This document shows positions 5,620-48,914 of a stretch of 64,000 nt of DNA, piece after piece. The position numbers were made by a program, and so were the translations under genes. Location: positions 124,001-188,000 of the IMG/VR virus record IMGVR_UViG_3300028920_000022; one strand, 5' to 3'. Position 1 is the first letter of the stretch. The number at the start of each line of letters is the position of its first letter. A model generated the notes under the pieces. The model saw nothing but the letters and a program-made list of their open reading frames with translations, searched no databases and was not told the DNA's origin.

Positions 5620-5916
5620 GTGGTGTGCTGTCCACTCTGCAAAAGAAAAGATTGCAATTTTAGCGATCATCATCTAGTTCCTCGCTCACGTGGAGGAACA
5701 CGCCAGGACACCGTTCCTATTTGTTTAGATTGCCACAACGGTGTACATGCGTTCTTTACCAACAAAGAATTAGAAAACGAATTCAACTCTGTCGAGGCGT
5801 TACTGGCTGACGAACGTTTTGCCAAACATCTAAGATGGCTGGCAAAACAAAACCCAACAAGACGTCATCGCTCCAAAAGAGTTCGAGACAAAAAGAAAAG
5901 AAACAGAAGTGGGTGA
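5620..5916 (+). CDS. HNH endonuclease-like protein
   Basis: CPLC...HHLVPRSRGG...CLDCHNGVH. Confidence 0.85.
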   Translation: MVCCPLCKRKDCNFSDHHLVPRSRGGTRQDTVPICLDCHNGVHAFFTNKELENEFNSVEALLADERFAKHLRWLAKQNPTRRHRSKRVRDKKKRNRSG

Positions 5917-6215
5917 GCTTTATTGGCGAAGAATTAGAAGAATATTATAATTCCCAGTACGATAAGTATTACAATTTTGACTACGACTTTAACTACGACT
6001 TATATAAAATAAATTTTGCACACAGCTGGCAACTATGTGAAAAAGAATCTAGAGAATCTTATGACCCGGTATTTGTTTGTAAGGTTTGCGGAATTTACGC
6101 TATTGGTAAACCTACAGATCGTTATTCTCCACATGTTTACGCTTATTATACGACGAATTACGACGAGTCGACAATGTCTTGTGCTGAGATTTGTGTAAAG
6201 GATATAATCGAATGA
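5913..6215 (+). CDS. zinc-finger microprotein with C-terminal IKDIIE-type tag
   Basis: HSW..CKVCG..MSCAEICVKDIIE; GTG start inferred from GTGA overlap. Confidence 0.7.
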   Translation: MSFIGEELEEYYNSQYDKYYNFDYDFNYDLYKINFAHSWQLCEKESRESYDPVFVCKVCGIYAIGKPTDRYSPHVYAYYTTNYDESTMSCAEICVKDIIE

Positions 6216-6424
6216 ACGTTTTATACGGTAGTCCACAAAATATGTCACGCATTACTTTAGACGAAATTCCTACAGATCCAATTATCGAACGAATCAAACG
6301 ACTTGCTTTATTGCGCCGAGAAGAACTACAAACTATATTACAATGTGCACCTGACCCTGAAAAATATAATCAAGAGCTATCTGTAATTAATAATATTCTT
6401 TCTGGTATAGAAGGGCTAGATTAG
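6212..6424 (+). CDS. hypothetical protein
   Basis: ATGA-coupled to previous gene. Confidence 0.6.
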   Translation: MNVLYGSPQNMSRITLDEIPTDPIIERIKRLALLRREELQTILQCAPDPEKYNQELSVINNILSGIEGLD

Positions 6425-6443
6425 CTCAGAAAACTCTTGCAAC

Positions 6444-6683
6444 GTGTCACGAAATGATGTAGAAGAGTTGCCGGAAGGTGTTCTTCCCCACGAATTTCCT
6501 AATGAGAATATAATTTCATACGATAATGTCTGTATCTGGTGTGGCGTTTCGAGCGCAACCATGGTGGACAAATTAAATAGAATTCCAGAGTTGCACGGTT
6601 TAACTAGACGCAGACGTGATATTGACATATACTACCCTTGTCTAAACGAAATTGAGAGAACCATCCACGAAATAATCAAGTAG
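6444..6683 (+). CDS. zinc-finger microprotein with C-terminal tag
   Basis: HEF..CIWCG..PCLNEIERTIHEIIK. Confidence 0.65.
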   Translation: MSRNDVEELPEGVLPHEFPNENIISYDNVCIWCGVSSATMVDKLNRIPELHGLTRRRRDIDIYYPCLNEIERTIHEIIK

Positions 6684-6695
6684 AGGAAAAACAAT

Positions 6696-8036
6696 ATGCT
6701 CACAGATGTTCCCGTTATCGATCAGAAATCTCTTGGACGTATCTTTCGCGTAGGTATTCGTGAAGGTAAAAATATTATGATTTTGGGTCCGTCTGGTGGC
6801 GGCAAAACATTTATTGCTGTGGATATCGCTCATTCAGAAGGATGTCGCCTAGTTTATATTAACTTGGCGGTATTGGAACGTACCGATTTCCAGGGGTTTC
6901 CTGTTATCTCTCAGGATAAAACACTGGTATCATACGCTACTCCTGACTTTTTGCCATTCGCCGACACCAACGAACGTGACGAAAAGAACGCTTTGGAAAA
7001 CCTCTCTACCATTCTCAATGACGCAAAAGATAAAAACATCATGGGAGAGATTGATAAGCGCTTGAATGCCGTGGAATATCGTCGTCAGGCTCGTATTATT
7101 GCGAATGCCATGCCGTACCTTTCGGAAGGCTCCCAAAAATCGCTGAAACCATACCTTAATAAGGTTCTAGCAAACCTCCCAGAAGGAAAACCAATTGTAT
7201 TCCTTTTCGATGAGGTCGATAAAGCCGCTAGCGAAACAATGCAAACTCTTCTGGAGTTCCTGCAGTTCAGAAGTATTAACGGACGCAAACTGGATATTAA
7301 GGCTTGTTTGCTGACTGGTAACTTGCCTGATGAACATGCTGCTTCTCAGCAGATTTCGCACGCCATTACGAAACGATGTAAGTCTTACAAGCTACAGTTG
7401 GACTTCAATCAGTGGCGTGAATGGGCTTATGGTCATGCCGTGCATGATTTGGTTGTTGGTTTCTTAACCGCTAACCCGGACTTTTTGCACAAGACCCCTC
7501 CAGACGGTGATCCTACTGCTTATGCTCTGCCGTCTCCTCGAACCTGGACTGACGTTAGTGATTCGTTGTGGGCTTTGGAAAAAGATAATCAATTCCAAAA
7601 GCTGAATGGCGAGGAGTTGGCTGGGTTGCAAAAACTTCTAATTGCTGGAAGCGTAGGAGACACTGCGGCAATTAAATTCGTTAACTGGTTCAAATACTAT
7701 CGTAAGATGGACCCGGTTGTGGAAGCTCTTTTGGAAAAGGGAAAGATGCCTGACCAAAAGAAACTGGACGCCCAGGAACTGTTTATCTGTGCTCTGTCGG
7801 CATGTTCCCGTGTATATAGAGAACTGAAGCCAAAGAACGAAGACAAAATTAAAAAGTATGCCAAGAATGTTTACAAGTGGATTGGTTCCCTTTCTGTAGA
7901 TATTCAAATGGGAGCTTCTCGTATGGCGTTCGGCGGAGACTTCGATAACATCCAAAAGTACCGTCTGTCGGAAATTGACGAGTTTTCCAACGTCTTCAAG
8001 CACATCAAGAAGACGATGCAAACTAATGATATCTGA
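6696..8036 (+). CDS. MoxR-like AAA+ ATPase
   Basis: Walker A GPSGGGKT, Walker B FLFDEVDKA, TGN sensor, PSPRTW. Confidence 0.9.
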   Translation: MLTDVPVIDQKSLGRIFRVGIREGKNIMILGPSGGGKTFIAVDIAHSEGCRLVYINLAVLERTDFQGFPVISQDKTLVSYATPDFLPFADTNERDEKNALENLSTILNDAKDKNIMGEIDKRLNAVEYRRQARIIANAMPYLSEGSQKSLKPYLNKVLANLPEGKPIVFLFDEVDKAASETMQTLLEFLQFRSINGRKLDIKACLLTGNLPDEHAASQQISHAITKRCKSYKLQLDFNQWREWAYGHAVHDLVVGFLTANPDFLHKTPPDGDPTAYALPSPRTWTDVSDSLWALEKDNQFQKLNGEELAGLQKLLIAGSVGDTAAIKFVNWFKYYRKMDPVVEALLEKGKMPDQKKLDAQELFICALSACSRVYRELKPKNEDKIKKYAKNVYKWIGSLSVDIQMGASRMAFGGDFDNIQKYRLSEIDEFSNVFKHIKKTMQTNDI

Positions 8037-8041
8037 GTGCC

Positions 8042-9547
8042 ATGGAAGTAATTAATAAAACAATCCTTGACCCAAAACAGTTGGGTGGGGATAAGTTCAA
8101 CGAATATAATCAAAAAATCTCGGTATCCAAAGTAGCTCTTGCAAAGAGCCCAGAAAAGGGAGGGATGCCGTTTATATTCGCCTTCACTAGCGTGAAAAAC
8201 CACACGTTAGATGAAGTGAAAATGCCGTACCTAAACAAAGACGGAGACGTAGAGTTCTCTTGTACGGCAGCAACTGATGGCAAAGAATATAAATGGAGCC
8301 CTCAGATTCTGGATATCCTGGGACCACGTGAGGTTGCAATCATCACAGCTCACGAAACCTATCATATTGTGTTACAACATTGTAATGCGCACCGTGCGTT
8401 TGGTAAACACAAAATGGCATGGGCGTTGGCGATTGACTATGTTGTCAATGGTATGATTGAACACGATTTGATTCAAAGTAATCAAATCTCTCAGTACGAT
8501 TGCGATAAAGCCAGAACAAACGGGAACCATCCTATTTGGAAGAATGGGATCGGTGGAACTAAAGGTCCGGTTTATTTCGATGAATTAATGAAGGATATCG
8601 AAAAAACCCTCAAACAACTAGCTGAAGATAAGAAAAAAGGTAAGAAATCTGTCGTTCCTACTGGAAATATTGCCGAAAAACAACCCAAACCGCAGGTTAT
8701 TCGTCCATATGCTGATTATAAGTTGTATGGTCGGTCGGCTGAGGATATTTATGATGAAATTATGAAAAAGATGGAGGAGGAAGCTAAGAAAAATGGTATG
8801 AAGCTTTCTGACCTTCTTAGTCCTGGGGATTTTCACCTGCCTGGTGGTTACGTAATTGGTGGCGGATCCATGATGGACGAACATAAAGAAAACGACATCA
8901 GCCGAACCAAACTTTTGGAAGAGGTTATGGATGCCGTTTCTGCTGCTCGTGCACTGTCTGCTGGTAATATGCCATCAGCTATTGAAGATCAGTTAAAAGC
9001 ATTACAAGAGCCAAAACTTAAGTGGCAGGATATCGTTCGCCATGCTCTGCAAACCACCCGCCAGGAAAAAGGTACGCTTAATGATTGGACGCGCATGCGG
9101 CGTCGGTTGGTTTCTTATGAAATCTTTGTGCCCAAAAAGAAGGATCAACGAGTTCGTTGGCTTTGTATGTTGGACACTTCTGGTTCTATGAGCGATGATG
9201 ATATCGTGTACGGAGTCTCACAGTTAAAAGTTTTGGACGGTAGATCTAAAGGTATTGTGGTTCCCTGTGATGCTCAGTGTTATTGGGACCATGCGGTGGA
9301 AATCCATGGCATGAGTGACCTGCCTAAGGTAAAGCCAGTAGGTAGAGGTGGCACCGTGTTTACTGATTTCTTTGAGAACTACGAAAAGAAGATCGCGGAA
9401 GAGATCGACCTAATTATTGTGATTACCGATGGATATTTGTACGATTTGGACATGAAAAAACCTGCAGTGGATTGTGTGTGGGTTATTACCAACGATAATG
9501 AGTTCAAAGCTCCGTTTGGTAGAACTGCACCCTTGCGTTCATATTGA
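8042..9547 (+). CDS. metallopeptidase-like/VWA domain protein (DUF2201-type), partner of AAA+
   Basis: TAATDG, HETYH (HExxH), MIDAS DTSGS, GRGGT, ITDG. Confidence 0.9.
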   Translation: MEVINKTILDPKQLGGDKFNEYNQKISVSKVALAKSPEKGGMPFIFAFTSVKNHTLDEVKMPYLNKDGDVEFSCTAATDGKEYKWSPQILDILGPREVAIITAHETYHIVLQHCNAHRAFGKHKMAWALAIDYVVNGMIEHDLIQSNQISQYDCDKARTNGNHPIWKNGIGGTKGPVYFDELMKDIEKTLKQLAEDKKKGKKSVVPTGNIAEKQPKPQVIRPYADYKLYGRSAEDIYDEIMKKMEEEAKKNGMKLSDLLSPGDFHLPGGYVIGGGSMMDEHKENDISRTKLLEEVMDAVSAARALSAGNMPSAIEDQLKALQEPKLKWQDIVRHALQTTRQEKGTLNDWTRMRRRLVSYEIFVPKKKDQRVRWLCMLDTSGSMSDDDIVYGVSQLKVLDGRSKGIVVPCDAQCYWDHAVEIHGMSDLPKVKPVGRGGTVFTDFFENYEKKIAEEIDLIIVITDGYLYDLDMKKPAVDCVWVITNDNEFKAPFGRTAPLRSY

Positions 9548-9750
9548 ACAAAAAACAACACGAAGTCCTAATAGGGGGACTTTTAGGAGACGCTTCCCTG
9601 GAATTGTCAGGGAAAATGCGTAATCCTCGTGTTCGTATTGAACGTTCTTACAAAGATATCAAATATTTACAGTGGCAGTATAATGTATTTAAAAGCATGT
9701 GCGGATCCGATGTACATGTTTACTGTAGGGCGCTGTCATGCTGTGTGTAA
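9544..9750 (+). pseudogene. truncated LAGLIDADG homing endonuclease remnant
   Basis: LIGGLLGDASL...YLQWQYNVFK, only 68 aa, 3' end overlapped by next gene. Confidence 0.65.
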
Positions 9751-9886
9751 AACGTGTGGTATACACGTTATTCAATTTCAAGAAGGTTGGCGAATATCAG
9801 CCTATAATAACTCACATAAAAGCTTGGTATTTAAGTGTCCTGATACTATATCTTGCAACGACTTTATTATCCGACAAATAATATGA
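9710..9886 (+). CDS. zinc-finger microprotein with C-terminal tag
   Basis: CKTCG..PDTISCNDFIIRQII. Confidence 0.65.
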   Translation: MYMFTVGRCHAVCKTCGIHVIQFQEGWRISAYNNSHKSLVFKCPDTISCNDFIIRQII

Positions 9887-10104
9887 AAACAAATAATATG
9901 AAAATAGGAACGCACGAGTTCACGCTTACTGGTTCTAACTATACCAAATGTAATTTATGTGGTATGGTGATTTTAGGTTTAAGTCATGGTTGGGTAATCT
10001 CATGCAGAAATAAGATCAGGGGTGATAGAAAATCTAAACCTATAAGCGGCTTCAAACCAGACTACATCTCCTGTAACGATTTTATAATCAAACAAATAAT
10101 CTAA
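9883..10104 (+). CDS. zinc-finger microprotein with C-terminal tag
   Basis: IGTHEF..CNLCG..PDYISCNDFIIKQII; paralog of previous gene. Confidence 0.7.
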   Translation: MKTNNMKIGTHEFTLTGSNYTKCNLCGMVILGLSHGWVISCRNKIRGDRKSKPISGFKPDYISCNDFIIKQII

Positions 10105-10105
10105 C

Positions 10106-11332: not shown

Positions 11333-11623
11333 ATGCGAAACAAAAAACCGGAAACCTGGAAAGATATTGTCAAAAAATTGCACACCAATGCGCCTGTTGC
11401 AAAAGGACACAACTGGACTATAACTGGTGGCGGGGGAGGATCGGAAGCTCGCTCATGGAGCCCGTTGTTTGACAAGGAAGCCACGCCAAAACATATTAAA
11501 TACAAATGTTTAAAGTGTGGAGCGACTGCAACCAAAGAGGTGGGCGGAGAGTTTCTGCTGGACAAGCCCGAATATCAAGATTTGACTTGCACTGAGGTTG
11601 CTATACATGATATCATCACCTGA
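11333..11623 (+). CDS. zinc-finger microprotein with C-terminal tag
   Basis: HNW..CLKCG..LTCTEVAIHDIIT. Confidence 0.75.
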   Translation: MRNKKPETWKDIVKKLHTNAPVAKGHNWTITGGGGGSEARSWSPLFDKEATPKHIKYKCLKCGATATKEVGGEFLLDKPEYQDLTCTEVAIHDIIT

Positions 11624-11923
11624 ATGAGTAAGAATATACGTTTTATTGTTGAGGATGTTGGACCAGCTCCAAAAGAAAAAGTATACGTAACCTTTACACG
11701 ATCCAAAAATGGCAGTAGAATAGTTACGGTTAATTGTCCGGCAGATGGAATACAACTTTCTGAAGCAAGAAAAATTGCAGAAGTTTCCGCAGAAAAATTA
11801 GCAAGAACACTTTGTTCTAGTTTGTGGTGGCGAGTTGATACCTTAGATCATGGAAAACGTCTAGCCGCCGCTCTAGAACACGTCATCAAACAGTTGAGAA
11901 ACTATAATGATCGTTCCTCCTGA
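11624..11923 (+). CDS. hypothetical protein
   Basis: Abuts previous stop. Confidence 0.6.
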   Translation: MSKNIRFIVEDVGPAPKEKVYVTFTRSKNGSRIVTVNCPADGIQLSEARKIAEVSAEKLARTLCSSLWWRVDTLDHGKRLAAALEHVIKQLRNYNDRSS

Positions 11924-12230
11924 TGAAGTAATTCTAATGCATCGACAGCTAATGGAATTGCAAGATCAAATCTTTAAGCTTAAATCGGAAATGCAAAACA
12001 AATGCGATCATGATCTTGTGAGTGAATGTAAAGATAACCCTATAATACAGCGTATTTGTGAAATATGTGGATTGTACGAGTGGCAGCATAACCAAGCACA
12101 TTTCAAAAAATTAACCAGCAGTAGGGTTAAATTAGTTTCAGACAGCGCAATGGTACAGCTTCGAATCACACTTCCTCACCACAAATTTTTAACTTCAAAC
12201 GAGCTGCCAGTAAAAGAAATAATTGAGTAA
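11907..12230 (+). CDS. coiled-coil/zinc-finger protein with C-terminal tag
   Basis: CDH..CEICG..LTSNELPVKEIIE. Confidence 0.7.
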   Translation: MIVPPDEVILMHRQLMELQDQIFKLKSEMQNKCDHDLVSECKDNPIIQRICEICGLYEWQHNQAHFKKLTSSRVKLVSDSAMVQLRITLPHHKFLTSNELPVKEIIE

Positions 12231-13116: not shown

Positions 13117-13422
13117 ATGCAACATACAGGCTTTAAAATACAGTCTAAAATTAAATATATGCAGATAGAAGATTTTGTGGAAAACCTTTTATCTGGTGAC
13201 TTGTTAGCAAAGTATAAATCTCATAATTGGAAAAAGAGGGGACGAAATCACGTTATGTGTAAGAGGTGTGGTAGCTATTTTCATTTTTATGATCCACACA
13301 ACAAAAAACAGGACATTACGTATCATTGTCGGTTCTACACATTTGTGGGCAACTGGCGCGAGTGTGGGTTTGATACCATCTTATCTTGTGTAGACATGCA
13401 AATAAAAGATATAATCGAATGA
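13117..13422 (+). CDS. zinc-finger microprotein with C-terminal tag
   Basis: HNW..CKRCG..LSCVDMQIKDIIE. Confidence 0.75.
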   Translation: MQHTGFKIQSKIKYMQIEDFVENLLSGDLLAKYKSHNWKKRGRNHVMCKRCGSYFHFYDPHNKKQDITYHCRFYTFVGNWRECGFDTILSCVDMQIKDIIE

Positions 13423-13853
13423 ATAGTTACAGATATTTTATTATTCACGATACGTGGGGAGATCTTCTTTTTCTGAAGACCCCAAAGCGCTTAGATAAAA
13501 CTATAGTAAAAAAACTGTTATTGGCTGATTACGATACGGTTTTGTTCGCAATTTCTAACAATACAGAAATTAATGTTGAGGCAACTAAAATTAAGGTTAC
13601 AATCCAAGACTATATTACACCAAGTTTCTTTTTAAATTGTAACAAAGAAGATTGGGAAGAAGACGATAATAAGTTTAATTTGTTGGATTCGAATAAGGTT
13701 TTATTATGTTCAGAAAAGTTTATGCGTCAAATGTTTTATTTGTGGAAACAAAGCGCAAACCCTTCAAGTATAGATAACAAAATTCTAAAATGGCTACGTC
13801 GCAACTACAAAGAAGCCATTAAGCTGGCGTGCATCAAGGACGTGGTAACTTGA
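13419..13853 (+). CDS. hypothetical protein with C-terminal tag
   Basis: Ends KLACIKDVVT; ATGA-coupled. Confidence 0.7.
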   Translation: MNSYRYFIIHDTWGDLLFLKTPKRLDKTIVKKLLLADYDTVLFAISNNTEINVEATKIKVTIQDYITPSFFLNCNKEDWEEDDNKFNLLDSNKVLLCSEKFMRQMFYLWKQSANPSSIDNKILKWLRRNYKEAIKLACIKDVVT

Positions 13854-13863: not shown

Positions 13864-13891
13864 TTGACATATCTCAGCCTCATGTTATACT
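13864..13891 (+). promoter_or_regulatory. sigma70-like promoter, probably leaderless
   Basis: TTGACA-16-TATACT with TG; ATG 7 nt after -10. Confidence 0.7.
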
Positions 13892-17605: not shown

Positions 17606-18388
17606 ATGAGACCTAAACAAAAAGATCAAAGAAGAAAAACCTCAAGACAGTTTGTTAATGTGCCGGAGGGGGTTTCCATTGTTGTTATGGGAGACGTCCA
17701 CGAACATGAGGAACAGTTCTACGCCACTCTGAAAGAGGTTCGTCCTCGTGAAGATATGTGGCTTGTATCATTGGGAGATATTTACGATAAGGGTTTTGGA
17801 ATTAAATCCGCTGAACGTATTACTGATGAGTTAATTAAACTCCAAAATAAAAACGTTTGTTATGCGGTTCGTGGTAATCATGAACTTAAACTCATTCGTA
17901 AAGCAAGAAAAACCCCCAAACTTACTCCTCAATTAAAATGGTGGTCAAACCAACCACTTGTACTTACATTTAATTTCAAAACCAGAAATACGATAACCGT
18001 ATTACACGCGGGTGTAACTCCCAACATGACCGAAGGAGATTTGGGGCATGGTGTAGAAGTTGTTTATGTTCGAGATGTGGACGAAGATGGACAAATGATT
18101 CCTTTGGTGTGGAAAGATATTAATGGAGTTCAAACTCTAGTTAAATCTAAAGAGGGTGGAAACAATTGGCATGATGTTTACGATGGAAGGTTCGGTTATA
18201 TTGTGGCTGGACATGCTGCCCAACGAGATGGAGAAGCTAAATTCTTTAATTATTCATGTAATATTGATTCTGATATTTATCAAAGCGGTAAATTAACTTC
18301 CGTTGTTTTCAATGACGAGGGTAAGTTGGTTAAAAAAATTATTATGGAGGGGATTGCGCGCAAACCCGAATTAAATATTGCTTATTGA
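17606..18388 (+). CDS. calcineurin-like metallophosphoesterase
   Basis: GDVHEH, GDIYDKG, RGNHE, HAG, GH. Confidence 0.9.
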   Translation: MRPKQKDQRRKTSRQFVNVPEGVSIVVMGDVHEHEEQFYATLKEVRPREDMWLVSLGDIYDKGFGIKSAERITDELIKLQNKNVCYAVRGNHELKLIRKARKTPKLTPQLKWWSNQPLVLTFNFKTRNTITVLHAGVTPNMTEGDLGHGVEVVYVRDVDEDGQMIPLVWKDINGVQTLVKSKEGGNNWHDVYDGRFGYIVAGHAAQRDGEAKFFNYSCNIDSDIYQSGKLTSVVFNDEGKLVKKIIMEGIARKPELNIAY

Positions 18389-18711
18389 TGCTTTTTGTTA
18401 TTGAATATTCAGCGAAGAAACCGTATTTCTTTTTCAAACAGGTAACTAACCTACAAAAAACTGTAGGAAGAGCTGCATTAATTGCAAAAGATCCTACAGA
18501 CTGCGAAGCTCGAATTGTAAAATTATTGCAACAAGAAGACGAATCTTTTATTCAAAATACCGGGTTACAGATTGTACATGTGTCCAGCGGAAAAGAATAT
18601 GCTGCAGGTTTTGAACACTTTATGCTGAGTTTCTTATCTTCTTTTGATGAAATTATTAAAAAAATGCGAAAAACTTACAACGAAGAAGTAATCAAAGATA
18701 TAATTACCTGA
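18385..18711 (+). CDS. hypothetical protein with C-terminal tag
   Basis: Ends YNEEVIKDIIT. Confidence 0.7.
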   Translation: MMLFVIEYSAKKPYFFFKQVTNLQKTVGRAALIAKDPTDCEARIVKLLQQEDESFIQNTGLQIVHVSSGKEYAAGFEHFMLSFLSSFDEIIKKMRKTYNEEVIKDIIT

Positions 18712-21515: not shown

Positions 21516-21800
21516 ATGTGTGATTCAGATCACATCATTTTCACAGACTTTTTAAACCAATTGGGACCCTGCAACGTACTTGCTGTACGGTCCCACCAAT
21601 GGTTTTTTAAGCACCATAGTTACAACTGGGTTAAAGACACTCAGTTGTATTCGTTTGAATGTATAGAATGTGACGCTAAAATAACATTAAATAGTTTGTC
21701 GGATATTGAGTACACGAACATTCAGCGCTTTACTGACAACGGATCTCAGTTTTTGGGATGTAAAGAGTTTCCTGTAGCGGATATTATATTAAATGACTGA
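21516..21800 (+). CDS. zinc-finger microprotein with degenerate C-terminal tag
   Basis: HHSYNW..CIECD..LGCKEFPVADIILND. Confidence 0.6.
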   Translation: MCDSDHIIFTDFLNQLGPCNVLAVRSHQWFFKHHSYNWVKDTQLYSFECIECDAKITLNSLSDIEYTNIQRFTDNGSQFLGCKEFPVADIILND

Positions 21801-22203
21801 AGAAGATCTTAAATGTGACTGTAAAACAGAGATTGAATTAACTCTGCATATAGATGAGGACGACGATATTTTTGTAGAATATTGGGATCCAGATTATTTG
21901 GCTAATCTGTTTCCAAAAACTTTAAAGAAATTGCGAGATGATTTTGGGGAAAGTAGTATTTCTGCTACAAAAATAATAGAAAGTGACAGCACAAAACTTC
22001 GCTTATTCTTTAAAAAAGGAGTTCATTTAGTTTTAGAACTTTATCCACATTGGATATCGGTACAAGTAGAGCATGGTAAAACTAAAATACCTTATAATTA
22101 TTTGAGAACTTTTGAGGTAGATGATTTTATTTGTAATTATATTAGCAAATGTGATGAGTATTTGACGCCGGAAGAAATTGCGATAAGGGATGTGATTGTG
22201 TGA
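21793..22203 (+). CDS. hypothetical protein with C-terminal tag
   Basis: Ends LTPEEIAIRDVIV. Confidence 0.7.
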   Translation: MTEEDLKCDCKTEIELTLHIDEDDDIFVEYWDPDYLANLFPKTLKKLRDDFGESSISATKIIESDSTKLRLFFKKGVHLVLELYPHWISVQVEHGKTKIPYNYLRTFEVDDFICNYISKCDEYLTPEEIAIRDVIV

Positions 22204-27570: not shown

Positions 27571-27571
27571 C

Positions 27572-32751: not shown

Positions 32752-32755
32752 TGGA

Positions 32756-33820
32756 ATGGATTGGCGAGAAAATAAAAGAAAATCTATTCTTCCACACTTT
32801 AAAGGCGAAGGAAAGTTTCTAAAATCTGTTCAAGAAGGCAGATACAAATTAGATATTTATCGCTACGGAACTAAACAAGGATGTTGGGAATATACTCAGG
32901 GTAGAGTATATAGAGATGGTAATTTTGTTACAAATGTTAATCGCAACTATAGTAGTTTTCCATTTTCTTGGATTGTTGGACACGCTAACGGTCATGATTA
33001 TTTAGTTGCCGGAGAGGACTATCAGGGACAAACTATAATCGAATTAGATACAGGAAAGCGATCCGACACTTTACCAGAAGATGCCGAAAAAGGTTGGGGG
33101 TTTTGCTGGGCAATACACAAATACTTCCCTAAACAACAAATTCTAGTAGTTGATGGATGCCTTTGGGCTTGCCCATATGAGTTTAGATTCTACGATTTTT
33201 CTGATCCGTTGAATTTTAAAGAAATTAAATATGAGGATGATTGTATATTGTCGGATGGTAAATTTCCAACGTTTGAATCCGATGGGATAATTCGTTGTTA
33301 TCAATTAGACATACAGCTGAATGATGGTGAGGATTGCGAAGACGACGAAGAGATTGAAAAAGCCATTGTTGCTCACAAAGATTTCAAACGTATTGGAAAC
33401 AAATTAGAATTTCAGAATGAATGGGTTTCTGAGGAAGAACAGGTTAGGCGCAAAAGAAGCCAAGAAGCCTGGGATCGTCGCGAGAGGGAAATAAAAGAAT
33501 TTAAGGAAAAAGATTCTCTTTATTTGTCTTACTTGGAGAATCTAAAAGATGGTACTCTAAGCCCCGAAAATTCAGAAGGTTGTGGAGTAACTTATAATGG
33601 TTGGTGTCCTAATTTCGACGTTGAAGAACGTCGGTGGTGTCGTCGAATAATTAAAAATACAAAAGGATATACTGTTGATTTAGATTGGGGAATTAAAACT
33701 GGACCAGTTAAATTAACTATATTCAAAAACGGGAACCATTTAGAAGATAAGTTTTGGATGGAACATTCTGTACAAAGTATAAACGATGCGTTTGAATATG
33801 CCAAGGAACTAATCAAATGA
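32756..33820 (+). CDS. hypothetical phage protein
   Basis: ~354-aa ORF; GFCW, VDGCLWACPYE. Confidence 0.75.
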   Translation: MDWRENKRKSILPHFKGEGKFLKSVQEGRYKLDIYRYGTKQGCWEYTQGRVYRDGNFVTNVNRNYSSFPFSWIVGHANGHDYLVAGEDYQGQTIIELDTGKRSDTLPEDAEKGWGFCWAIHKYFPKQQILVVDGCLWACPYEFRFYDFSDPLNFKEIKYEDDCILSDGKFPTFESDGIIRCYQLDIQLNDGEDCEDDEEIEKAIVAHKDFKRIGNKLEFQNEWVSEEEQVRRKRSQEAWDRREREIKEFKEKDSLYLSYLENLKDGTLSPENSEGCGVTYNGWCPNFDVEERRWCRRIIKNTKGYTVDLDWGIKTGPVKLTIFKNGNHLEDKFWMEHSVQSINDAFEYAKELIK

Positions 33821-36352: not shown

Positions 36353-37009
36353 ATGAAAAAAATGAGCTTTGTCCATCCCATGATTTATGAAAAGACACGG
36401 GATGGGGAAATGTTATATGATGTTTATTCGCGCCTAATAAAGGAACGCATAGTTTTTCTAGCAGATGAGGTGGATGTGGAGGTAGCAACAACGGTAGCTG
36501 CTACCTTTTTGTTTCTGGACAGCCAGAGCAAAACGAAACCAATCTCCCTGTATATTAATTCCCCTGGCGGTTCTGTACATGATGGGCTGTTTACCATTTA
36601 CGATGCCATAAATTATATAGAGTGTCCTGTTAAAACTGTGTGCTTAGGTGAGGCTGCTTCCGCGGCTGCAACAATATTGGCTGCCGGTTCACCCGGAATG
36701 AGGTTTGCTACTCCTAATAGTTTAATCATGATTCACCAGTTGCAGATTTCAGATTTGTCTGGTAAAGGAACAGATGTAGCAAAGGAAGCAGAACGGATTA
36801 AAGAATGGAACGAGAGATTGTTTCAAACATTAGCCCGCCATACTGGGCATACTACTGAGGAAATTGCTCAAGTATGTAGAGATGATACGTATTTTAACGC
36901 AAAACAAGCTAAGGAATTCGGTTTGATTGATGAAATTGTTGAACCGAAGAAAAAGATTCCCGATTTAATTACCCAAACCCCAAAAGCAAGACGGAAAAAG
37001 GGTTCGTGA
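36353..37009 (+). CDS. clpP: ATP-dependent Clp protease proteolytic subunit
   Basis: YDVYSRLIKERIVFL, YINSPGGSV, AASAA (catalytic Ser), IMIHQ, RDDTYF..EFGLIDEI. Confidence 0.95.
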   Translation: MKKMSFVHPMIYEKTRDGEMLYDVYSRLIKERIVFLADEVDVEVATTVAATFLFLDSQSKTKPISLYINSPGGSVHDGLFTIYDAINYIECPVKTVCLGEAASAAATILAAGSPGMRFATPNSLIMIHQLQISDLSGKGTDVAKEAERIKEWNERLFQTLARHTGHTTEEIAQVCRDDTYFNAKQAKEFGLIDEIVEPKKKIPDLITQTPKARRKKGS

Positions 37010-42885: not shown

Positions 42886-42915
42886 TTGATTTGCGCATAG
42901 CTTTTGTGGTATGAT
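42886..42915 (+). promoter_or_regulatory. sigma70-like promoter, probably leaderless
   Basis: TTGATT-18-TATGAT with TG; ATG 6 nt downstream. Confidence 0.6.
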
Positions 42916-42921
42916 TGCGTC

Positions 42922-44391
42922 ATGAAAATTAGAAACATACGTTTAGGTTTTGCTACCAACAGTTCTAGTAGCCATAGCATTGTTGTAATTAATGGTGGGG
43001 TTAGCACTTCTAATAGCAATGAACAAGATTTTGGTTGGGATAATTTTACTCTCGGCTCGTATAAATCAAAACTAGAATATCTAGGGCAAATATTAAAAGA
43101 ATCATTTTGTCGTTGGAATTCTTTAGGAAGTAAAGAAGCGGCGCTTCTAGCTAGTAGCTGGTTAGGTATTGATGTAGATCCGAATGGATATATTGATCAT
43201 CAAAGTATGTGGGTGATACCACGTGATTATAAAATTGACTCTTATTGGGGCGCGGGACATATGCCAAGCCGTGAGTTGGTTGAGGCGATGAAATGTGAAT
43301 TACACCGAAAAGATATAGTTATTTTAGGTGGTAATGATAATAGCGACGGACACCCGTTAGCGGATAACGATCTTGCTCCTGCTTTTGCAGGGTTTGATAG
43401 AGATTATTATCGTGGAGAGTGTATAGTAAGGCATGATGAAACGTATGATTATTGGACCATGTTTGATCACACTTCAGGAAATAAAGTAAGATTCAACTTT
43501 ACTGAGAATAGTATTACCAGAGCTGAAGCTCCTGAATTAGTGGATATAAAAATTACTGATAAATGTACCAGGAATTGTAAGTTTTGTTATCAGGATTCTA
43601 AAGTGGATGGTAAACATGCGGACATGTCAGTTATTAGAGAAATTATTAAAACCCTGCATGAAGTGAAGGTATTTGAAGTGGCTCTTGGTGGTGGAGAACC
43701 CACAGAACACCCAGAGTTTATAGCTATATTAAAGAGTTTTAATTCGGTGGGAATTGTTCCTAATTTTTCTACGCGCAATGTAAAATGGGTAAAAGACAAC
43801 ATAGAGGAATTACGTGATGCTGGTGTAGGCGGAATAGGTATTAGTGTTGATAATGTTGAAGATGTAAAACGTGTTCTTTTCCACCTACAGGATGTGAATA
43901 AATTAAATTCACAAGGAGAACATAAACCTTCTATTGTGTTGCATCACGTAGTAGGGGTTGCTCCTGAAAAAGAGTTTGTAGAAATATTAGAATTGGCTCA
44001 AAAGGTTGGATATAGACCATGGGGAGCTAGCGGATGGGCAAATAATCCCTTGCTCCTTTTGGGTTATAAAACTACCGGACGAGGTGGGCAATTTGTTCCG
44101 CATCAGTTTGATGTAATAAAGTTGCTCAAAAATCTTAAGAAAGAACAAGGGTACAACATTGGTGTAGATACGGCGTTTATTGATCAACATAAAGATGAAT
44201 TGTCTAAGCTTACCGATCCGATTTATTGGACAGCAGGCGAAGGTAACTTTTCATTTTATATGGACGCTGTGAACCATAAAATGGGCAACTCTTCATACGA
44301 TCCCTGCCTAATTTCTCTTGCTTTGGGAGATGAATTTAAGGAAATCTATGCGCTAACTCCTGAAGAGAGAATCATTAAAGAGATTGTATGA
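42922..44391 (+). CDS. radical SAM protein with N-terminal TNSSS domain and C-terminal tag
   Basis: IRLGFATNSSSSHS; CTRNCKFCY; ALGGGEP; ends LTPEERIIKEIV. Confidence 0.9.
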   Translation: MKIRNIRLGFATNSSSSHSIVVINGGVSTSNSNEQDFGWDNFTLGSYKSKLEYLGQILKESFCRWNSLGSKEAALLASSWLGIDVDPNGYIDHQSMWVIPRDYKIDSYWGAGHMPSRELVEAMKCELHRKDIVILGGNDNSDGHPLADNDLAPAFAGFDRDYYRGECIVRHDETYDYWTMFDHTSGNKVRFNFTENSITRAEAPELVDIKITDKCTRNCKFCYQDSKVDGKHADMSVIREIIKTLHEVKVFEVALGGGEPTEHPEFIAILKSFNSVGIVPNFSTRNVKWVKDNIEELRDAGVGGIGISVDNVEDVKRVLFHLQDVNKLNSQGEHKPSIVLHHVVGVAPEKEFVEILELAQKVGYRPWGASGWANNPLLLLGYKTTGRGGQFVPHQFDVIKLLKNLKKEQGYNIGVDTAFIDQHKDELSKLTDPIYWTAGEGNFSFYMDAVNHKMGNSSYDPCLISLALGDEFKEIYALTPEERIIKEIV

Positions 44392-46156: not shown

Positions 46157-46170
46157 CTAGGAGAATAAAA

Positions 46171-46461: not shown

Positions 46462-46492
46462 TTGATGTTATTTTTCGTATAAGGAAAAACCA

Positions 46493-47196: not shown

Positions 47197-47996
47197 GAAT
47201 CTTTTTAGTTCGGCACGGAGAATCCCAAGCAAATGTAGATAAATCTTTGCATAAGATTATTCCAGATCACGAAATTGCTCTAACCACAGAAGGAATGGAA
47301 CAGGCTCAGATTGCTGGACAAAAATTAAAAGAATACCTTAAAGATAATCCTACAGCAAGTATGGATCTGGGTTCATCCTTACTAGACAGCATTATTAATA
47401 TAGCGGCTAAACAAAAAGGTATTGGAGAAAAACAAGTAGCTAACGTCAAAGACTTGATAAGCAAACAAATATCTTCCGGCAAGAAAACTAAAGCCCGGTT
47501 ATGGCATTCGCCATATCGTAGAACCAGGGAAACGGCACGTATAATTTCTGGCGTGGCTCAGGAATATATTCTAGATGTTCGGGAACATATTTTACTTTGT
47601 GAACAACAGTTTGGTTTGTTTGATGGGCTAACAAAAGAAGAATCCAACGAAAAGTTTCCAGATGAATTTCAAACTTTCCAGCATGCTAAGAAATATAATG
47701 GAAAGTTTTGGGCTAGGTTTCCTATGGGAGAGTCTCCGTTTGATGCTGCGTGCAGAATTCACCAGGCATTTGGTACTTTTAAACGTGATGAGGAAAATAA
47801 GAACATCAATGATATAATTGTGGTTTGCCATGGGGCGGTATCCAAACTTTTTACAATGATGTGGCTTCATAAGGAACCGGAATGGTTTCAAAAGGAGCCT
47901 ACGTGTGGTAATTGTGGTATTCGTTTAATAGAAAACCACGAAGATAAAGGTTACATTTTTGGCGGGTGGTTAAATGGCAAAGAGTGGCACTCATAG
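47193..47996 (+). CDS. histidine phosphatase (phosphoglycerate mutase-like)
   Basis: LVRHGES, SPYRRTRET, EQQFG, GES, VCHG. Confidence 0.93.
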   Translation: MRIFLVRHGESQANVDKSLHKIIPDHEIALTTEGMEQAQIAGQKLKEYLKDNPTASMDLGSSLLDSIINIAAKQKGIGEKQVANVKDLISKQISSGKKTKARLWHSPYRRTRETARIISGVAQEYILDVREHILLCEQQFGLFDGLTKEESNEKFPDEFQTFQHAKKYNGKFWARFPMGESPFDAACRIHQAFGTFKRDEENKNINDIIVVCHGAVSKLFTMMWLHKEPEWFQKEPTCGNCGIRLIENHEDKGYIFGGWLNGKEWHS

Positions 47997-48171
47997 CTTT
48001 GTTCCGACTGTTGGCGAAGAAAAATGTTTAAGTTATTTTCGTTGTGTTAACTGTGGGATGTTGGCATTTTTAGCGTATCCCAATTATTATATTATAGCCG
48101 AGCTGTATAATTGGGAAAGTTGTAAAGATTTTTCCTGTAATGAGTGGATTATTCGCGAAATAGTAAAATGA
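47974..48171 (+). CDS. zinc-finger microprotein with C-terminal tag
   Basis: GTHSF..CVNCG..FSCNEWIIREIVK. Confidence 0.75.
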   Translation: MAKSGTHSFVPTVGEEKCLSYFRCVNCGMLAFLAYPNYYIIAELYNWESCKDFSCNEWIIREIVK

Positions 48172-48389
48172 TTAAGATAGGAACTCATATTTTTGTTAGA
48201 TCAGAAACTCCGTCCGGCGGATGTAAACCATTCATTTATTTTAAGTGTAATAAATGCGGAATGTTTGTATTCGATTTTGTATTCGATTCTGCACTTGAAT
48301 CACGGTATATTATTTCTGGAGCATGTAGTGAAAAGATGCCTGAAAAATTCACATGTGATGAATGGATTGTTCGTTCTATAATTAAATGA
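48168..48389 (+). CDS. zinc-finger microprotein with C-terminal tag
   Basis: IGTHIF..CNKCG..FTCDEWIVRSIIK. Confidence 0.75.
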   Translation: MIKIGTHIFVRSETPSGGCKPFIYFKCNKCGMFVFDFVFDSALESRYIISGACSEKMPEKFTCDEWIVRSIIK

Positions 48390-48604
48390 GCCATAAATTT
48401 AGTTATAATTTGAAAAAAGAAATGCGTATTTCTGTAGGCACACATAAATTACGATGGTGTTTGCATGACGATTTAGATTATTTTGTTTGTGAGAAATGTG
48501 GAATTTTAACTTTTAAATCGCGTAGAAAATGGATAACTTACGATTGGCTACCAATAACAACATTTACTTGCGACGAGTGGATAATCAAATCGGTGATAGA
48601 GTGA
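48386..48604 (+). CDS. zinc-finger microprotein with C-terminal tag
   Basis: VGTHKL..CEKCG..FTCDEWIIKSVIE. Confidence 0.75.
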   Translation: MSHKFSYNLKKEMRISVGTHKLRWCLHDDLDYFVCEKCGILTFKSRRKWITYDWLPITTFTCDEWIIKSVIE

Positions 48605-48608
48605 TATT

Positions 48609-48914
48609 ATGTCTATAATATACAAACCAGGAAACGTATCACCAGATCGATATGCATATTTGGTTGGCTGTATAGAAACTAACTCTCCATATCGCATGAT
48701 TAGAGTAGATATCTATGGGTCTAATGCTTTGAATTCGACCCACATGAGTTCTGAATGTTATGTGGATATTTTACAAGCCACTGGCAAAACTTACGAAGAA
48801 GCTTGCAATAATTTAATTTCTATTATAACCGCCACCCCAATGTTTCGTTGGATAGTGGATTTGTTACCAGAACGTCTTCAACGCGAAATAACTATTAAGG
48901 ATATAATAACCTAG
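48609..48914 (+). CDS. hypothetical protein with C-terminal tag
   Basis: Ends LQREITIKDIIT. Confidence 0.7.
   Translation: MSIIYKPGNVSPDRYAYLVGCIETNSPYRMIRVDIYGSNALNSTHMSSECYVDILQATGKTYEEACNNLISIITATPMFRWIVDLLPERLQREITIKDIIT

What the first reader, a model, noticed from the sequence alone, without database searches (positions are those of the whole stretch)
5913..48914. Shared C-terminal 'IKDIIE' peptide on 23 diverse phage proteins: candidate undescribed addressing/docking system
Seen in sequence: 22 ORFs end in the same ~13-aa motif directly before the stop, consensus [LF][ST][CP]xExx[IV][KR][DE][IV][IV][ETK]*. By stop coordinate: 6215 SCAEICVKDIIE; 6683 EIERTIHEIIK; 9886 SCNDFIIRQII; 10104 SCNDFIIKQII; 11623 TCTEVAIHDIIT; 12230 TSNELPVKEIIE; 13422 SCVDMQIKDIIE; 13853 LACIKDVVT; 18711 NEEVIKDIIT; 21800 GCKEFPVADIILND; 22203 TPEEIAIRDVIV; 22481 NEFCIKDIIE; 24527 TLEEEIAKEIIE; 27031 TCVEGQIKDIIE; 27931 TQYKILDVIE; 28284 SEEDVTIKDIIE; 32146 LEEIIQDIIE; 44391 TPEERIIKEIV; 48171 SCNEWIIREIVK; 48389 TCDEWIVRSIIK; 48604 TCDEWIIKSVIE; 48914 QREITIKDIIT. 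A 23rd copy (DEVTIEEVIK, 22783) lies behind a premature stop. The carrier bodies differ: zinc-finger microproteins, a DnaJ-type finger, a 3-TM membrane protein, a ~490-aa radical SAM enzyme and unrelated hypotheticals. Substitutions are conservative (I/V, K/R/H, D/E). The tag persists at operon ends (12230, 13853, 48914), where no translational coupling is needed, which points to selection on the peptide. All carriers are + strand, and none has the KxA leader. Inference: a portable amphipathic C-terminal helix read by one hub. Candidate roles are a degron or substrate tag for the co-encoded ClpP, Thr-protease or AAA+/VWA machines; a cargo/import signal for a phage compartment; or a ligand for one host protein, analogous to EEVD-TPR or PDZ C-terminal recognition. 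I know of no described system with this motif.
Basis: partly seen in the sequence, partly recalled or inferred. Interest (0 to 1): 0.95.

Follow-up and report, generated by a model that had tools for sequence, protein, structure and literature searches.

The report
Shared C-terminal tag in huge phages
About a fifth of the genes in this stretch of a 459-kb uncultured phage end in the same 13-residue helix (consensus L-T-x-D-E-x-I-I-K-D-I-I-E-stop); selection acts on the peptide, which sits on many unrelated proteins across a clade of huge phages and matches no described family, so it looks like a new shared docking or addressing tag whose reader is unknown.

Summary
All 23 listed stops carry the peptide. 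A matrix trained only on relatives puts its 15 best hits, out of 19,703 window positions, within one residue of a C-terminus. The window is part of IMG/VR contig 3300028920_000022 (458,729 bp).

Selection acts on the peptide, not the DNA. Relatives with 19-49% GC keep the residues with different codons. Orthologue tails show 14 synonymous and 6 conservative changes. Ribosome-binding-site and promoter explanations fail, although codon bias (AAG, ATA) is superimposed.

The carriers are less diverse than claimed. Twelve of 22 belong to one undescribed family of 60-140-aa His-Cys3 zinc-finger microproteins (409 clusters, tandem arrays of up to 14-17 genes). In this family the tag is the only helix and holds the fourth zinc ligand.

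The tag is nevertheless portable. In a radical SAM family it is an 11-12-residue extension found only in this clade. It also ends membrane proteins, DUF4116 repeat proteins and many small unknowns. In sampled loci of a 435-kb relative, 84 of 337 proteins carry it.

There is no match in Pfam, PHROGs, PDB, GenBank phages, GTDB genomes or the literature.

Best reading: a self-contained capped helix used as a common docking tag.

The parts
5835..6215 (+). Zinc-finger microprotein (126 aa) ending MSCAEICVKDIIE*. The next gene's ATG at 6212 overlaps the stop (ATGA).
6444..6683 (+). Zinc-finger microprotein (79 aa) ending CLNEIERTIHEIIK*, directly upstream of AAA+ 6696. Its orthologue in L004 ends CLNTIERTIHEIIT*.
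9629..9886 (+). Zinc-finger microprotein ending ISCNDFIIRQII*. Start codon uncertain.
9853..10104 (+). Zinc-finger microprotein ending ISCNDFIIKQII*, a paralogue of 9629. Likely start is ATG 9883.
11333..11623 (+). Zinc-finger microprotein (96 aa) ending LTCTEVAIHDIIT*. Orthologues P0004 and P0005 are on other contigs.
11907..12230 (+). Finger-family member (CxxCG, 107 aa) ending LTSNELPVKEIIE*, with no Cys in the tail. No start codon in the next 46 nt.
13117..13422 (+). Zinc-finger microprotein (101 aa) ending LSCVDMQIKDIIE*.
13419..13853 (+). Non-finger protein (about 144 aa) ending ACIKDVVT*, followed by a promoter-like site. The L004 orthologue is 30% identical in the body but has the same IKDVV with 3 synonymous changes.
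18385..18711 (+). Non-finger protein (108 aa) ending EEVIKDIIT*. The downstream gene has its own GGA-rich ribosome-binding site.
21516..21800 (+). Finger-family member ending LGCKEFPVADIILND*, a shifted and looser copy.
21793..22203 (+). Non-finger protein (136 aa) ending LTPEEIAIRDVIV*.
22200..22481 (+). Non-finger protein (93 aa) ending NEFCIKDIIE*.
22478..22783 (+). Tandem paralogue of 22200, broken by an in-frame TAA at 22688-22690. The same frame continues to VDEVTIEEVIK*, overlapping the ATG of AAA+ 22780.
24081..24527 (+). Protein with a DnaJ-type CxxCxGxG finger (148 aa) ending LTLEEEIAKEIIE*.
26828..27031 (+). Zinc-finger microprotein (67 aa) ending LTCVEGQIKDIIE*.
27512..27931 (+). 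Non-finger protein (139 aa) ending LTQYKILDVIE*, a looser copy.
27928..28284 (+). Non-finger protein ending LSEEDVTIKDIIE*, directly upstream of the DUF2201 gene at 28285.
31817..32146 (+). Membrane protein with three predicted transmembrane segments (109 aa) ending RRDYLEEIIQDIIE*. The basic residues after the last segment put the tail in the cytoplasm (inference from the positive-inside rule).
42904..44391 (+). Radical SAM enzyme (PF04055, 495 aa) ending ALTPEERIIKEIV*. The tail is an 11-12-residue extension beyond the family's native C-terminus.
47974..48171 (+). Zinc-finger microprotein (65 aa) ending FSCNEWIIREIVK*.
48168..48389 (+). Zinc-finger microprotein ending FTCDEWIVRSIIK*.
48386..48604 (+). 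Zinc-finger microprotein (72 aa) ending FTCDEWIIKSVIE*. This is the protein modelled: five strands plus helix 62-71.
48609..48914 (+). Non-finger protein (101 aa) ending REITIKDIIT*, last gene before a convergent ORF.
32693..33820 (+). Possible extra carrier (375 aa) ending FEYAKELIK* (10.3 bits).
6696..9547 (+). Context: MoxR-like AAA+ (6696..8036) plus a DUF2201_N metallopeptidase-like / DUF2201 VWA protein (8042..9547). Candidate reader only.
22780..24084 (+). Context: second MoxR-like AAA+, inside a tag-rich cluster. Its partner DUF2201 gene is at 28285..29622.
36353..37009 (+). Context: ClpP (PF00574, E 2.5e-60), untagged.

Best explanation
The tail is a short, self-contained C-terminal alpha-helix that is kept by selection on the peptide. 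It serves as a common, portable docking tag on the accessory proteins of a clade of uncultured huge phages.

Anatomy (consensus from 145 family representatives):
- L(-13) and T/S(-12), then x, D/N, E(-9) and a hydrophobic residue at -8. This is the textbook 'hydrophobic staple plus capping box' that starts a helix.
- E(-9), K(-5) and E(-1) are spaced i, i+4, i+8, as in a salt-bridge ladder.
- The Ile pairs at -7/-6 and -3/-2 fall on one face.

Carriers:
- In the main carrier, a very large family of 60-140-aa His-Cys3 zinc-finger microproteins, position -11 is the fourth zinc ligand and the tail is the only helix.
- On other proteins the same 11-13 residues, without the Cys, are simply appended. 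These include a radical SAM enzyme, membrane proteins, DUF4116 repeat proteins and many small unknowns.

Inferred mechanism: the exposed Ile face binds one conserved partner. That would bring a large, fast-evolving set of accessory proteins to one place or one machine. Carriers could be variable binding modules that recruit a common effector (adaptor reading), or clients sorted, loaded or removed together (cargo reading).

My first candidates are the phage's own MoxR-like AAA+ with its VWA-metallopeptidase partner, then ClpP with the AAA protein at 55113, then a virion or compartment scaffold.

In most genes the codons of the tail also contain the ribosome-binding region and the overlapping ATG of the next gene. 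This double use probably helped the tail spread as a ready-made gene end.

Shown: the motif, its C-terminal anchoring, selection on the peptide, its helical state, its portability and its clade-wide scale. Inferred: that it is read in trans, and by what.
For: 1. C-terminal anchoring and enrichment.

2. Selection on the peptide:
- Relatives at 48-84% AAA+ identity and 28-49% GC keep the residues with other codons.
- Orthologue pairs show, in the core (-6..-2), 20 identical codons, 14 synonymous changes and 6 conservative replacements, while the bodies are 30-52% identical.
- Ile is kept rather than other residues with AT-rich codons.

3. Not a coupling artefact:
- At least 11 ATGA-overlap junctions in the window lack the motif.
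- 21 of 137 tagged genes have no downstream start within 25 nt yet keep perfect tails.
- The conserved stretch extends 39 nt, well beyond any ribosome-binding site.

4. Constant tail on variable bodies: body against tail identity is 0.20 against 0.57 for 145 representatives, and 0.25-0.42 against 0.73-0.77 within tandem arrays.

5. Helix: the AlphaFold2 model built with 145 sequences has pLDDT 84.5 and pTM 0.69, with residues 62-71 helical. Mean pLDDT is 91 for residues 61-70 and 81 for 71-72. H20, C35 and C38 are invariant and C62 nearly so.

6. Portability: of the 120 best radical SAM homologues, only the 4 closest (42% identity or more) carry the tail. The alignment shows it as an extension beyond the native ..YF[SA]T[LF] end.

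7. Scale:
- The pattern IKDIIE+TGA gives 80 matches in 2.9 million viral contigs. 41 are in one 435-kb contig and 12 in the window's contig.
- 84 of 337 proteins in sampled loci of the 435-kb contig are tagged, 70 of them not fingers. The large ones are DUF4116 repeat proteins and a DUF4419 protein.

8. Neighbourhood: in the window and in the L004, L015 and L024 relatives a tagged gene sits directly upstream of the MoxR-like AAA+. In L053 and L054 tagged genes lie next to the orthologues of AAA+ 22780 and DUF2201 28285.
Against: - No partner was found and no binding was tested.
- In the finger family the helix may simply pack on its own sheet. A high pLDDT fits that, and I could not inspect the coordinates. 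Part of the conservation could therefore be structural.
- The hydrophobic moment of the consensus is unremarkable: 0.33, reached by 37% of shuffles.
- Codon bias in the tails shows a nucleotide-level process that I cannot fully explain. Lys is AAG in 58% of tails against 10% in gene bodies in the 435-kb phage, and Ile at -3 is ATA in 15 of 16 window tails against 28% in internal Ile-Ile pairs.
- Neighbourhood with the AAA+/DUF2201 genes comes from related, syntenic phages, most of them found through that AAA+, so it is not independent evidence.
- The tagged fractions come from loci chosen because they contain a tag, so they overstate genome-wide frequency.
- My gene calls are crude (longest ORFs).
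Confidence: 0.55

Rival explanations
1. Family feature plus 3'-end capture, with no common reader. The motif is just the conserved core helix and zinc ligand of one hugely expanded finger family. Because finger genes lie next to everything, deletions or recombination now and then fuse the last 11-13 codons onto neighbouring genes. There they are kept because a stable, soluble capped helix with a built-in ribosome-binding site and overlapping start is harmless or mildly useful.
For: - 12 of 22 window carriers are fingers.
- The tail holds the fourth ligand and is confidently modelled inside the fold.
- Fingers occur in arrays of up to 14-17 copies next to varied genes.
- Genome-specific codon preferences in the tails suggest shared descent or gene conversion.
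- 78 of 137 tails supply the next gene's ATG.
Against: - Tails on non-finger proteins are under purifying selection. IKDVV is unchanged, with 3 synonymous differences, on a body only 30% identical. Four radical SAM orthologues at 42-51% identity keep the tail.
- In the 435-kb phage non-finger carriers outnumber fingers 70 to 14 and keep the full 13-residue pattern without the Cys.
- The tail is far more constant than the sheet it would pack on.
Confidence: 0.2
2. Tail-to-tail association. The Ile-rich helices bind each other as a short Ile zipper, so tagged proteins co-assemble into mixed oligomers or a condensate without a separate receptor.
For: - There is a strict preference for Ile over Leu or Val at four positions. 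Ile at core positions is known to set the oligomer state of coiled coils (established knowledge of GCN4 variants).
- One family member carries two tails in tandem (P0028).
- No receptor-type domain (TPR, PDZ) was seen among the window proteins scanned.
Against: - Eleven residues is very short for a stable coiled coil.
- Nothing was tested.
- The monomer model is confident without a partner.
Confidence: 0.12
3. By-product of gene-junction signals. The peptide is only the translation of a Shine-Dalgarno sequence (AAGGA), an AT-rich spacer and an overlapping start (GAATGA) read in the upstream frame.
For: - K-D is often AAG-GAT, and E-stop is GAATGA with the next ATG in 78 of 137 cases.
- AAG is enriched 58% against 10%.
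Against: - At least 11 ATGA junctions in the window have other peptides.
- The motif is kept with AAA, CGN or CAA at the Lys position, and in 21 genes with no nearby downstream start. AAG is no more frequent in coupled than in uncoupled tails.
- Conservation runs 39 nt upstream.
- Residues are invariant where codons vary.
- The same residues are kept from 19 to 49% GC.
Confidence: 0.05
4. Embedded sigma-70-type promoters. TTG from the [ST]-Cys codons would be a -35 box, and GAT-ATA-AT a TATAAT -10 box 18 nt later.
For: - ATA at the first Ile of the final pair occurs in 15 of 16 window tails against 28% of internal Ile-Ile pairs (Fisher p = 7e-7), which creates GATATAAT.
Against: - The bias is not kept in relatives (ATT 13, ATA 7).
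- Ile-to-Val tails destroy the -10 box.
- The hexamer ends 3 nt before the next ATG, so a transcript would start inside the downstream gene.
- Promoter-like sites are not significantly enriched (68 against 54.2, sd 7.8) and few coincide with tails.
- A clear intergenic TTGACA-16-TATACT promoter-like site stands apart at 13864-13891.
Confidence: 0.02

Closest known systems
Encapsulation peptides of bacterial microcompartments (e.g. the N-termini of PduP and PduD, the C-terminus of CcmN) and cargo-loading peptides of encapsulins
   Same: A short terminal helix with paired hydrophobic residues separated by polar ones. It is appended to unrelated proteins and is enough to address them to one protein scaffold. 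This is my knowledge of those systems; the resemblance is a lead only.
   Different: No shell or encapsulin gene was seen among the window proteins scanned. The sequence consensus is different. The number of carriers per genome is far larger. Here the tail is also an integral zinc-binding helix of one family.
Capsid-targeting sequence of the T4 internal proteins (IPI-III, Alt)
   Same: A constant short terminal peptide on hypervariable, fast-evolving phage accessory proteins, with a Glu-containing motif nearby. This is my knowledge of T4 biology.
   Different: The T4 signal is N-terminal, sits on a handful of proteins, and is removed by the prohead protease after L/I-x-E. Here the signal is C-terminal, the residue three before the conserved Glu is Cys, Pro or a charged residue rather than Leu or Ile, and no cleavage is shown.
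Poxvirus ankyrin-repeat proteins with a C-terminal PRANC/F-box-like motif; Legionella Dot/Icm effectors with C-terminal signals
   Same: Large, expanded families of variable binding modules (repeats, small domains) that share a constant element at the extreme C-terminus, read by one machine. Here the carriers are DUF4116 repeat proteins, another repeat family in L002, and zinc fingers.
   Different: There is no sequence or fold relation. These are eukaryotic-host or secretion-system contexts, and no reader is known here.
Lineage-specific zinc-ribbon expansion of Bacillus phage G (about 35 copies; Iyer et al. 2021, PMC7824862)
   Same: A large expansion of small zinc-binding proteins in a giant phage.
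   Different: tblastn of one family member (P0087) found nothing in 50,697 GenBank phage records at E up to 1. No shared C-terminal tag on other proteins is reported there.
C-terminal degrons and docking tails (ssrA LAA for ClpX/ClpA; EEVD for TPR co-chaperones; SSB DDDIPF)
   Same: Recognition of the last few residues of many different proteins by one hub.
   Different: The tail ends in Ile-Ile-Glu (or Lys, Thr, or nothing), not Leu-Ala-Ala. The last residue is poorly conserved between orthologues (1 of 5 pairs identical). The conserved unit is a 13-residue helix, not a 3-6-residue extended peptide. No TPR was found in the window.

Membership tests
Gene-junction artefact (Shine-Dalgarno sequence plus ATGA overlap) | The motif appears wherever genes overlap by ATGA and only there | tested here: not met
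   At least 11 ATGA junctions in the window lack it. 21 of 137 tagged genes have no start within 25 nt.
Gene-junction artefact (Shine-Dalgarno sequence plus ATGA overlap) | Conservation lies in the nucleotides and not in the residues | tested here: not met
   Residues are kept with varied codons across 19-49% GC. Orthologue cores show 14 synonymous against 6 conservative changes. A secondary codon bias does exist.
Sigma-70 promoter embedded in coding sequence | -35 and -10 hexamers at 16-18 nt, kept in relatives, with a start site upstream of the next gene | tested here: not met
   The hexamer ends 3 nt before the next ATG.
One paralogous protein family (shared descent of whole proteins) | All carriers align over their bodies | tested here: not met
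   12 of 22 do (His ... CxxC ... Cys). The others show no body similarity and include PF04055, a DnaJ-type finger and a membrane protein.
Known zinc-finger or zinc-ribbon families (Pfam, PDB) | A significant profile or fold match | tested here: not met
   Pfam and PHROGs give nothing above threshold. The best Foldseek E-value is 3.6 against PDB and 0.97 against BFVD. The best PDB sequence E-value is 0.019, to generic fingers.
Microcompartment encapsulation peptide / encapsulin cargo peptide | A terminal amphipathic helix appended to cargo | tested here: inconclusive
   A helix is predicted and it is appended on the radical SAM enzyme. The hydrophobic moment is unremarkable.
Microcompartment encapsulation peptide / encapsulin cargo peptide | A co-encoded shell protein (BMC domain or encapsulin) | tested here: not met
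   None among about 105 window proteins scanned with Pfam. The rest of the 459-kb genome was not scanned.
T4-type capsid-targeting sequence | N-terminal position and an L/I-x-E cleavage site | tested here: not met
   The motif is C-terminal. The residue three before the conserved Glu is Cys in 137 of 145 fingers and Pro, Glu, Lys or Asp elsewhere. Cleavage cannot be tested here.
ClpXP/ClpAP ssrA-like degron | A non-polar C-terminal tripeptide (LAA-like) | tested here: not met
   Glu is last in 117 of 145. Whether the phage ClpP (36353) or the AAA protein at 55113 acts on the tail cannot be tested with these tools.
Client or adaptor of a MoxR AAA+ / VWA system | Physical or genetic dependence on the AAA+/VWA pair | not testable with these tools
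   Only conserved adjacency in related phages. The published proposal for this pair in jumbo phages is a role in virion assembly and processing (PMC7824862).

The most novel reading that the evidence does not exclude
A proteome-scale addressing code in huge phages. One 13-residue C-terminal helix marks dozens to about a hundred fast-evolving accessory proteins per genome for a single phage-encoded reader (an AAA+ machine, a protease, or a virion or compartment scaffold). The phage could then load, position or destroy its whole host-takeover arsenal as one set. The zinc-finger and repeat families would be interchangeable target-binding modules built on that common handle.
Probability: 0.4. Interest if true: 0.9.

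Novelty: new variant of a known kind. Interest (0 to 1): 0.8.

Why it matters
Huge phages carry hundreds of genes with no known function. Here a simple, searchable mark groups a large share of them into one functional set, and it defines a new zinc-finger microprotein family (409 clusters at 50% identity) that is absent from Pfam, PHROGs and cultured phages.

If the tail is read by one partner, finding that partner would assign a common fate to all carriers at once. It would give the first case in phages of a shared C-terminal addressing signal used at the scale of a proteome.

An 11-13-residue self-folding tag with a dedicated reader would also be a useful tool.

Even if there is no reader, the case shows how one short coding segment can serve at once as a helix, a zinc ligand, a ribosome-binding site and a start-codon donor, and spread across a genome.

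Tried and rejected
1. Ribosome-binding-site / ATGA-overlap artefact: rejected as the main cause, kept as a secondary layer.
2. Embedded promoters: rejected.
3. 'All carriers are paralogues': only 12 of 22.
4. Pfam, PHROGs, PDB sequence search, and Foldseek against PDB and BFVD: nothing significant.
5. The first AlphaFold run with 26 sequences was too poor to use (pLDDT 56.8).
6. Megablast of 24 kb and tblastn of one finger against GenBank phages: no match. The AAA+ is at most about 24% identical to Salicola phage SCTP-2 and Sinorhizobium phage Phosso.
7. The degenerate DNA pattern for the finger tail in 185,579 GTDB genomes: no match.
8. Literature search for the peptide strings found only chance hits, and a keyword search was uninformative.
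10. False positives set aside:
- The ClpP of L002 ends GIIDDIIE*, but this looks like the usual ClpP C-terminal helix (my knowledge).
- The Thg1-like proteins end ..RDLIVQ*, a family feature that is internal in some relatives.
11. A strong amphipathic moment was expected but not found.
12. The 'KxA leader' remark and a whole-genome census were not done, because only parts of the 459-kb contig could be fetched.

Full report
**1. The observation**

Every one of the 23 stop coordinates carries the quoted peptide. The window has 39% GC and is almost entirely + strand. It is part of a 458,729-bp viral contig, IMGVR_UViG_3300028920_000022 = Ga0272441_10000008, at about positions 114,001-178,000.

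- A loose regex for the core, [KRHQ][DEQS][IV][IVL] ending 0-2 residues before the stop, hits 19 of 103 + strand genes. Its internal frequency predicts 0.58.
- A matrix trained only on 28 tails from other contigs ranks 15 window sites highest out of 19,703 positions. All 15 lie 0-1 residue from a C-terminus.
- The '23rd copy' is an ORF with an in-frame TAA at 22688-22690 that continues to ..VDEVTIEEVIK-TGA.

**2. Peptide or DNA?**

The tail often reads AAG GAT ATA ATC GAA TGA. That contains AAGGA, TATAAT and an ATG overlapping the stop, so I tested three nucleotide-level explanations.

(a) Coupling.
- At least 11 ATGA-overlap junctions in the window have unrelated peptides.
- Of 137 tagged genes in this and a related genome, 78 overlap the next ATG as ATGA and 14 as TAATG or TGATG. 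But 21 have no start within 25 nt and keep perfect tails.

(b) Promoter.
- The ATA bias that creates TATAAT (15 of 16 against 28% of internal Ile-Ile pairs, p = 7e-7) is not kept in relatives.
- Val variants destroy the box, and the hexamer ends 3 nt before the next ATG.
- Promoter-like sites are not enriched.

(c) Comparative test.
- I found relatives through the neighbouring AAA+ (17 metagenome loci at 48-100% identity, GC 28-49%).
- I found others through a carrier protein (L004, a syntenic 163-kb contig).
- All end genes with the same residues (LLTCDEVIIKDVIE, GLTCNEVIIRQIIE, TISADEWIIKQIIE, ILTLNEYIIKSIIE and so on) but with different codons.
- In eight orthologue comparisons the core positions show 20 identical codons, 14 synonymous changes and 6 conservative replacements. 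The bodies are 30-52% identical in four of the five window-L004 pairs and 82% in the fifth. The last residue is the least conserved.

So selection acts on the peptide.

A nucleotide layer remains. In the 435-kb relative, Lys is AAG in 58% of tails against 10% in gene bodies, and ATA is enriched. This holds equally in coupled and uncoupled tails. It may reflect tuning of the ribosome-binding site, or shared descent and gene conversion of the tails. I leave it unexplained.

**3. What the carriers are**

Twelve of the 22 window carriers align as one family: His-x-[FW] ... CxxC[GK] ... L-[ST]-C-x-[ED]-x-x-I-[KR]-x-I-I-x-stop.

- A profile search of 1.84 billion representative proteins finds 409 clusters at E up to 0.001. 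Nearly all are 59-137 aa, with the profile ending at the last residue.
- In 145 of them His20, Cys35 and Cys38 are invariant and Cys62 nearly so.
- The last 13 residues read L-T-C-[DNE]-E-[VIFMWY]-I-I-K-[DNESQ]-I-I-E. Counts out of 145: Cys 137, Glu(-9) 131, Ile(-3) 136, Glu(-1) 117.
- With this alignment AlphaFold2 gives a confident model (pLDDT 84.5, pTM 0.69): five strands followed by one helix, residues 62-71, which is the tag.
- Nothing similar is found in PDB or BFVD by fold, in PDB by sequence, or in Pfam or PHROGs.

The family forms tandem arrays: 14 consecutive genes in L030 and about 17 in L034. Bodies are hypervariable and tails constant: identity 0.25-0.42 against 0.73-0.77 within arrays, and 0.20 against 0.57 across the family.

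For the fingers, the first half of the motif is a zinc ligand and the tail is part of the domain.

**4. The tail is nevertheless portable**

- The radical SAM enzyme (PF04055) has 1,670 homologues. Among the best 120, only the four closest (42% identity or more) end in L-[ST]-P-E-[ED]-R-[IV]-[IV]-[KR]-[ED]-I-[IV]-x. All the others end differently, many with ..YF[SA]T[LF].
- The alignment shows the tail as an 11-12-residue extension starting exactly after the native last Leu.
- Other non-finger carriers in the window: a membrane protein with three predicted transmembrane segments, whose tail should be cytoplasmic by the positive-inside rule; a protein with a DnaJ-type finger; and several small unknowns.
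- Searching IMG/VR for IKDIIE+TGA in any codons gives 80 matches. 41 are in one 435-kb contig (3300027740_000003), 12 in the window's contig and 27 scattered.
- In the fetched loci of the 435-kb contig 84 of 337 distinct proteins end in the tag, 70 of them not fingers (41-439 aa). In loci of the window's contig the figure is 48 of 177. These loci were chosen because they contain a tag, so the fractions are upper estimates. In the unbiased window it is 22 of 103.
- The larger carriers are DUF4116 repeat proteins and a DUF4419 protein. In L002 another helical-repeat family carries a variant..KIKKEIxxLKEII-stop.
- Enzymes of known function in the window are mostly untagged: AAA+, VWA, RNA ligase, FtsK, topoisomerase, ClpP, Thg1, Dam, RNase HII and others.

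**5. Reading the motif** (inference from established helix rules)

- L(-13), [ST](-12), E(-9) and the hydrophobic residue at -8 form a hydrophobic staple plus capping box.
- E(-9), K(-5) and E(-1) are spaced i, i+4, i+8.
- The four Ile fall within an arc of about 140 degrees.

The tail thus looks like a minimal helix that folds by itself and offers an Ile face. The global hydrophobic moment is not exceptional, because the staple residue lies on the other side.

**6. Mechanism**

What is shown is a constant, portable C-terminal helix under purifying selection on a large and otherwise fast-evolving set of accessory proteins. I infer that it is a docking element read by one conserved partner, or by itself.

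Two versions fit the carriers:
- Adaptor: variable fingers or repeats bind targets, and the tail recruits a machine.
- Cargo: tagged proteins are gathered, loaded or removed together.

Candidate readers:
- The two MoxR-like AAA+ / DUF2201 (metallopeptidase-like plus VWA) pairs. They sit inside tag-rich clusters here and in the 435-kb relative, usually with a tagged gene directly upstream. Iyer et al. proposed a virion-assembly and processing role for this pair in jumbo phages (PMC7824862).
- ClpP 36353 with the AAA protein at 55113.
- A DnaJ homologue that flanks the array in L034.

None of this is a test, because the synteny comes from related genomes.

The main rival is that the tail is simply the finger family's core helix, copied onto neighbours as a convenient gene end. 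Selection on the tails of non-finger proteins argues against it, but it is not excluded.

**7. Comparison with known systems, and novelty**

The closest analogies are functional only: microcompartment encapsulation peptides and encapsulin cargo peptides, the N-terminal capsid-targeting sequence of T4 internal proteins, poxvirus ankyrin/PRANC proteins and Dot/Icm effectors, and C-terminal degrons or EEVD-type tails. For each, at least one defining feature is not met here (see the membership table).

The finger-plus-tail was not found:
- in 50,697 GenBank phage records (one member searched);
- in 185,579 GTDB genomes;
- in the searchable literature.

I rate it a new variant of a known kind, namely terminal addressing or docking peptides, carried mainly by a new protein family.

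Noticed in passing
window 22478-22783: An in-frame TAA at 22688-22690 splits a tagged paralogue of 22200..22481. The frame stays open to the tail, which overlaps the ATG of AAA+ 22780. It could be a nonsense mutation, an assembly error or readthrough; undecided.
   Followed up: partly
window tails; L035-L077: Synonymous codon bias inside the tails that differs between genomes. In the window, Ile(-3) is ATA in 15 of 16. In the 435-kb phage, Lys is AAG in 58% against 10% in bodies. The bias is the same with or without a downstream start, which suggests gene conversion or shared descent of tails, or an RNA-level signal.
   Followed up: partly
window 56474-56827: Phage-encoded ribosomal protein S21 (PF01165, E 2.3e-14). 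A YggL 50S-binding protein family hit also occurs elsewhere in the window.
   Followed up: no
window 4234-5010, 17606-18388, 19861-21093, 49398-50576: An RNA-repair-like gene set: a Thg1-like protein, a metallophosphoesterase, a T4-type RNA ligase and an RlaP nucleotidyltransferase.
   Followed up: no
L004 7960-8838 (also L005-L008): A LAGLIDADG homing endonuclease gene sits just after the DUF2201 gene in the 163-kb relative and is absent at the same place in the window.
   Followed up: no
L030 8236-9849: The ribonucleotide reductase large subunit of a tag-using phage carries an intein splicing domain. A sigma factor and a DnaB helicase lie next to the 14-gene finger array.
   Followed up: no
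P0028 (109 aa): A family member with two tails in tandem (..LSCDEIIIKNIIHYTCNEYIIKNIIE). It is the only case seen where a tail is not terminal.
   Followed up: no
L002 8341-9794, 13310-14360, 17352-17942: An expanded family of proteins built from repeats of about 23 residues (W..IS..Q.LSE.FIEKH.DKI.W), each ending ..KIKKEIxxLKEII-stop. It is a second variable scaffold carrying a variant of the tag.
   Followed up: partly
It lies between tagged genes.
   Followed up: partly
window 52094-52927: This metallophosphoesterase holds two internal tail-like stretches (LDLTDIIT and RIKDIIT; 12.5 bits), the best internal match in the window.
   Followed up: no
window 13864-13891 and 5576-5600: Promoter-like sites of sigma-70 type in intergenic gaps: TTGACA-16-TATACT with a TG extension at 13864-13891, and a bare TTGACA hexamer just after 5576 that the scan did not flag. 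They hint at a host with standard sigma-70 recognition.
   Followed up: no
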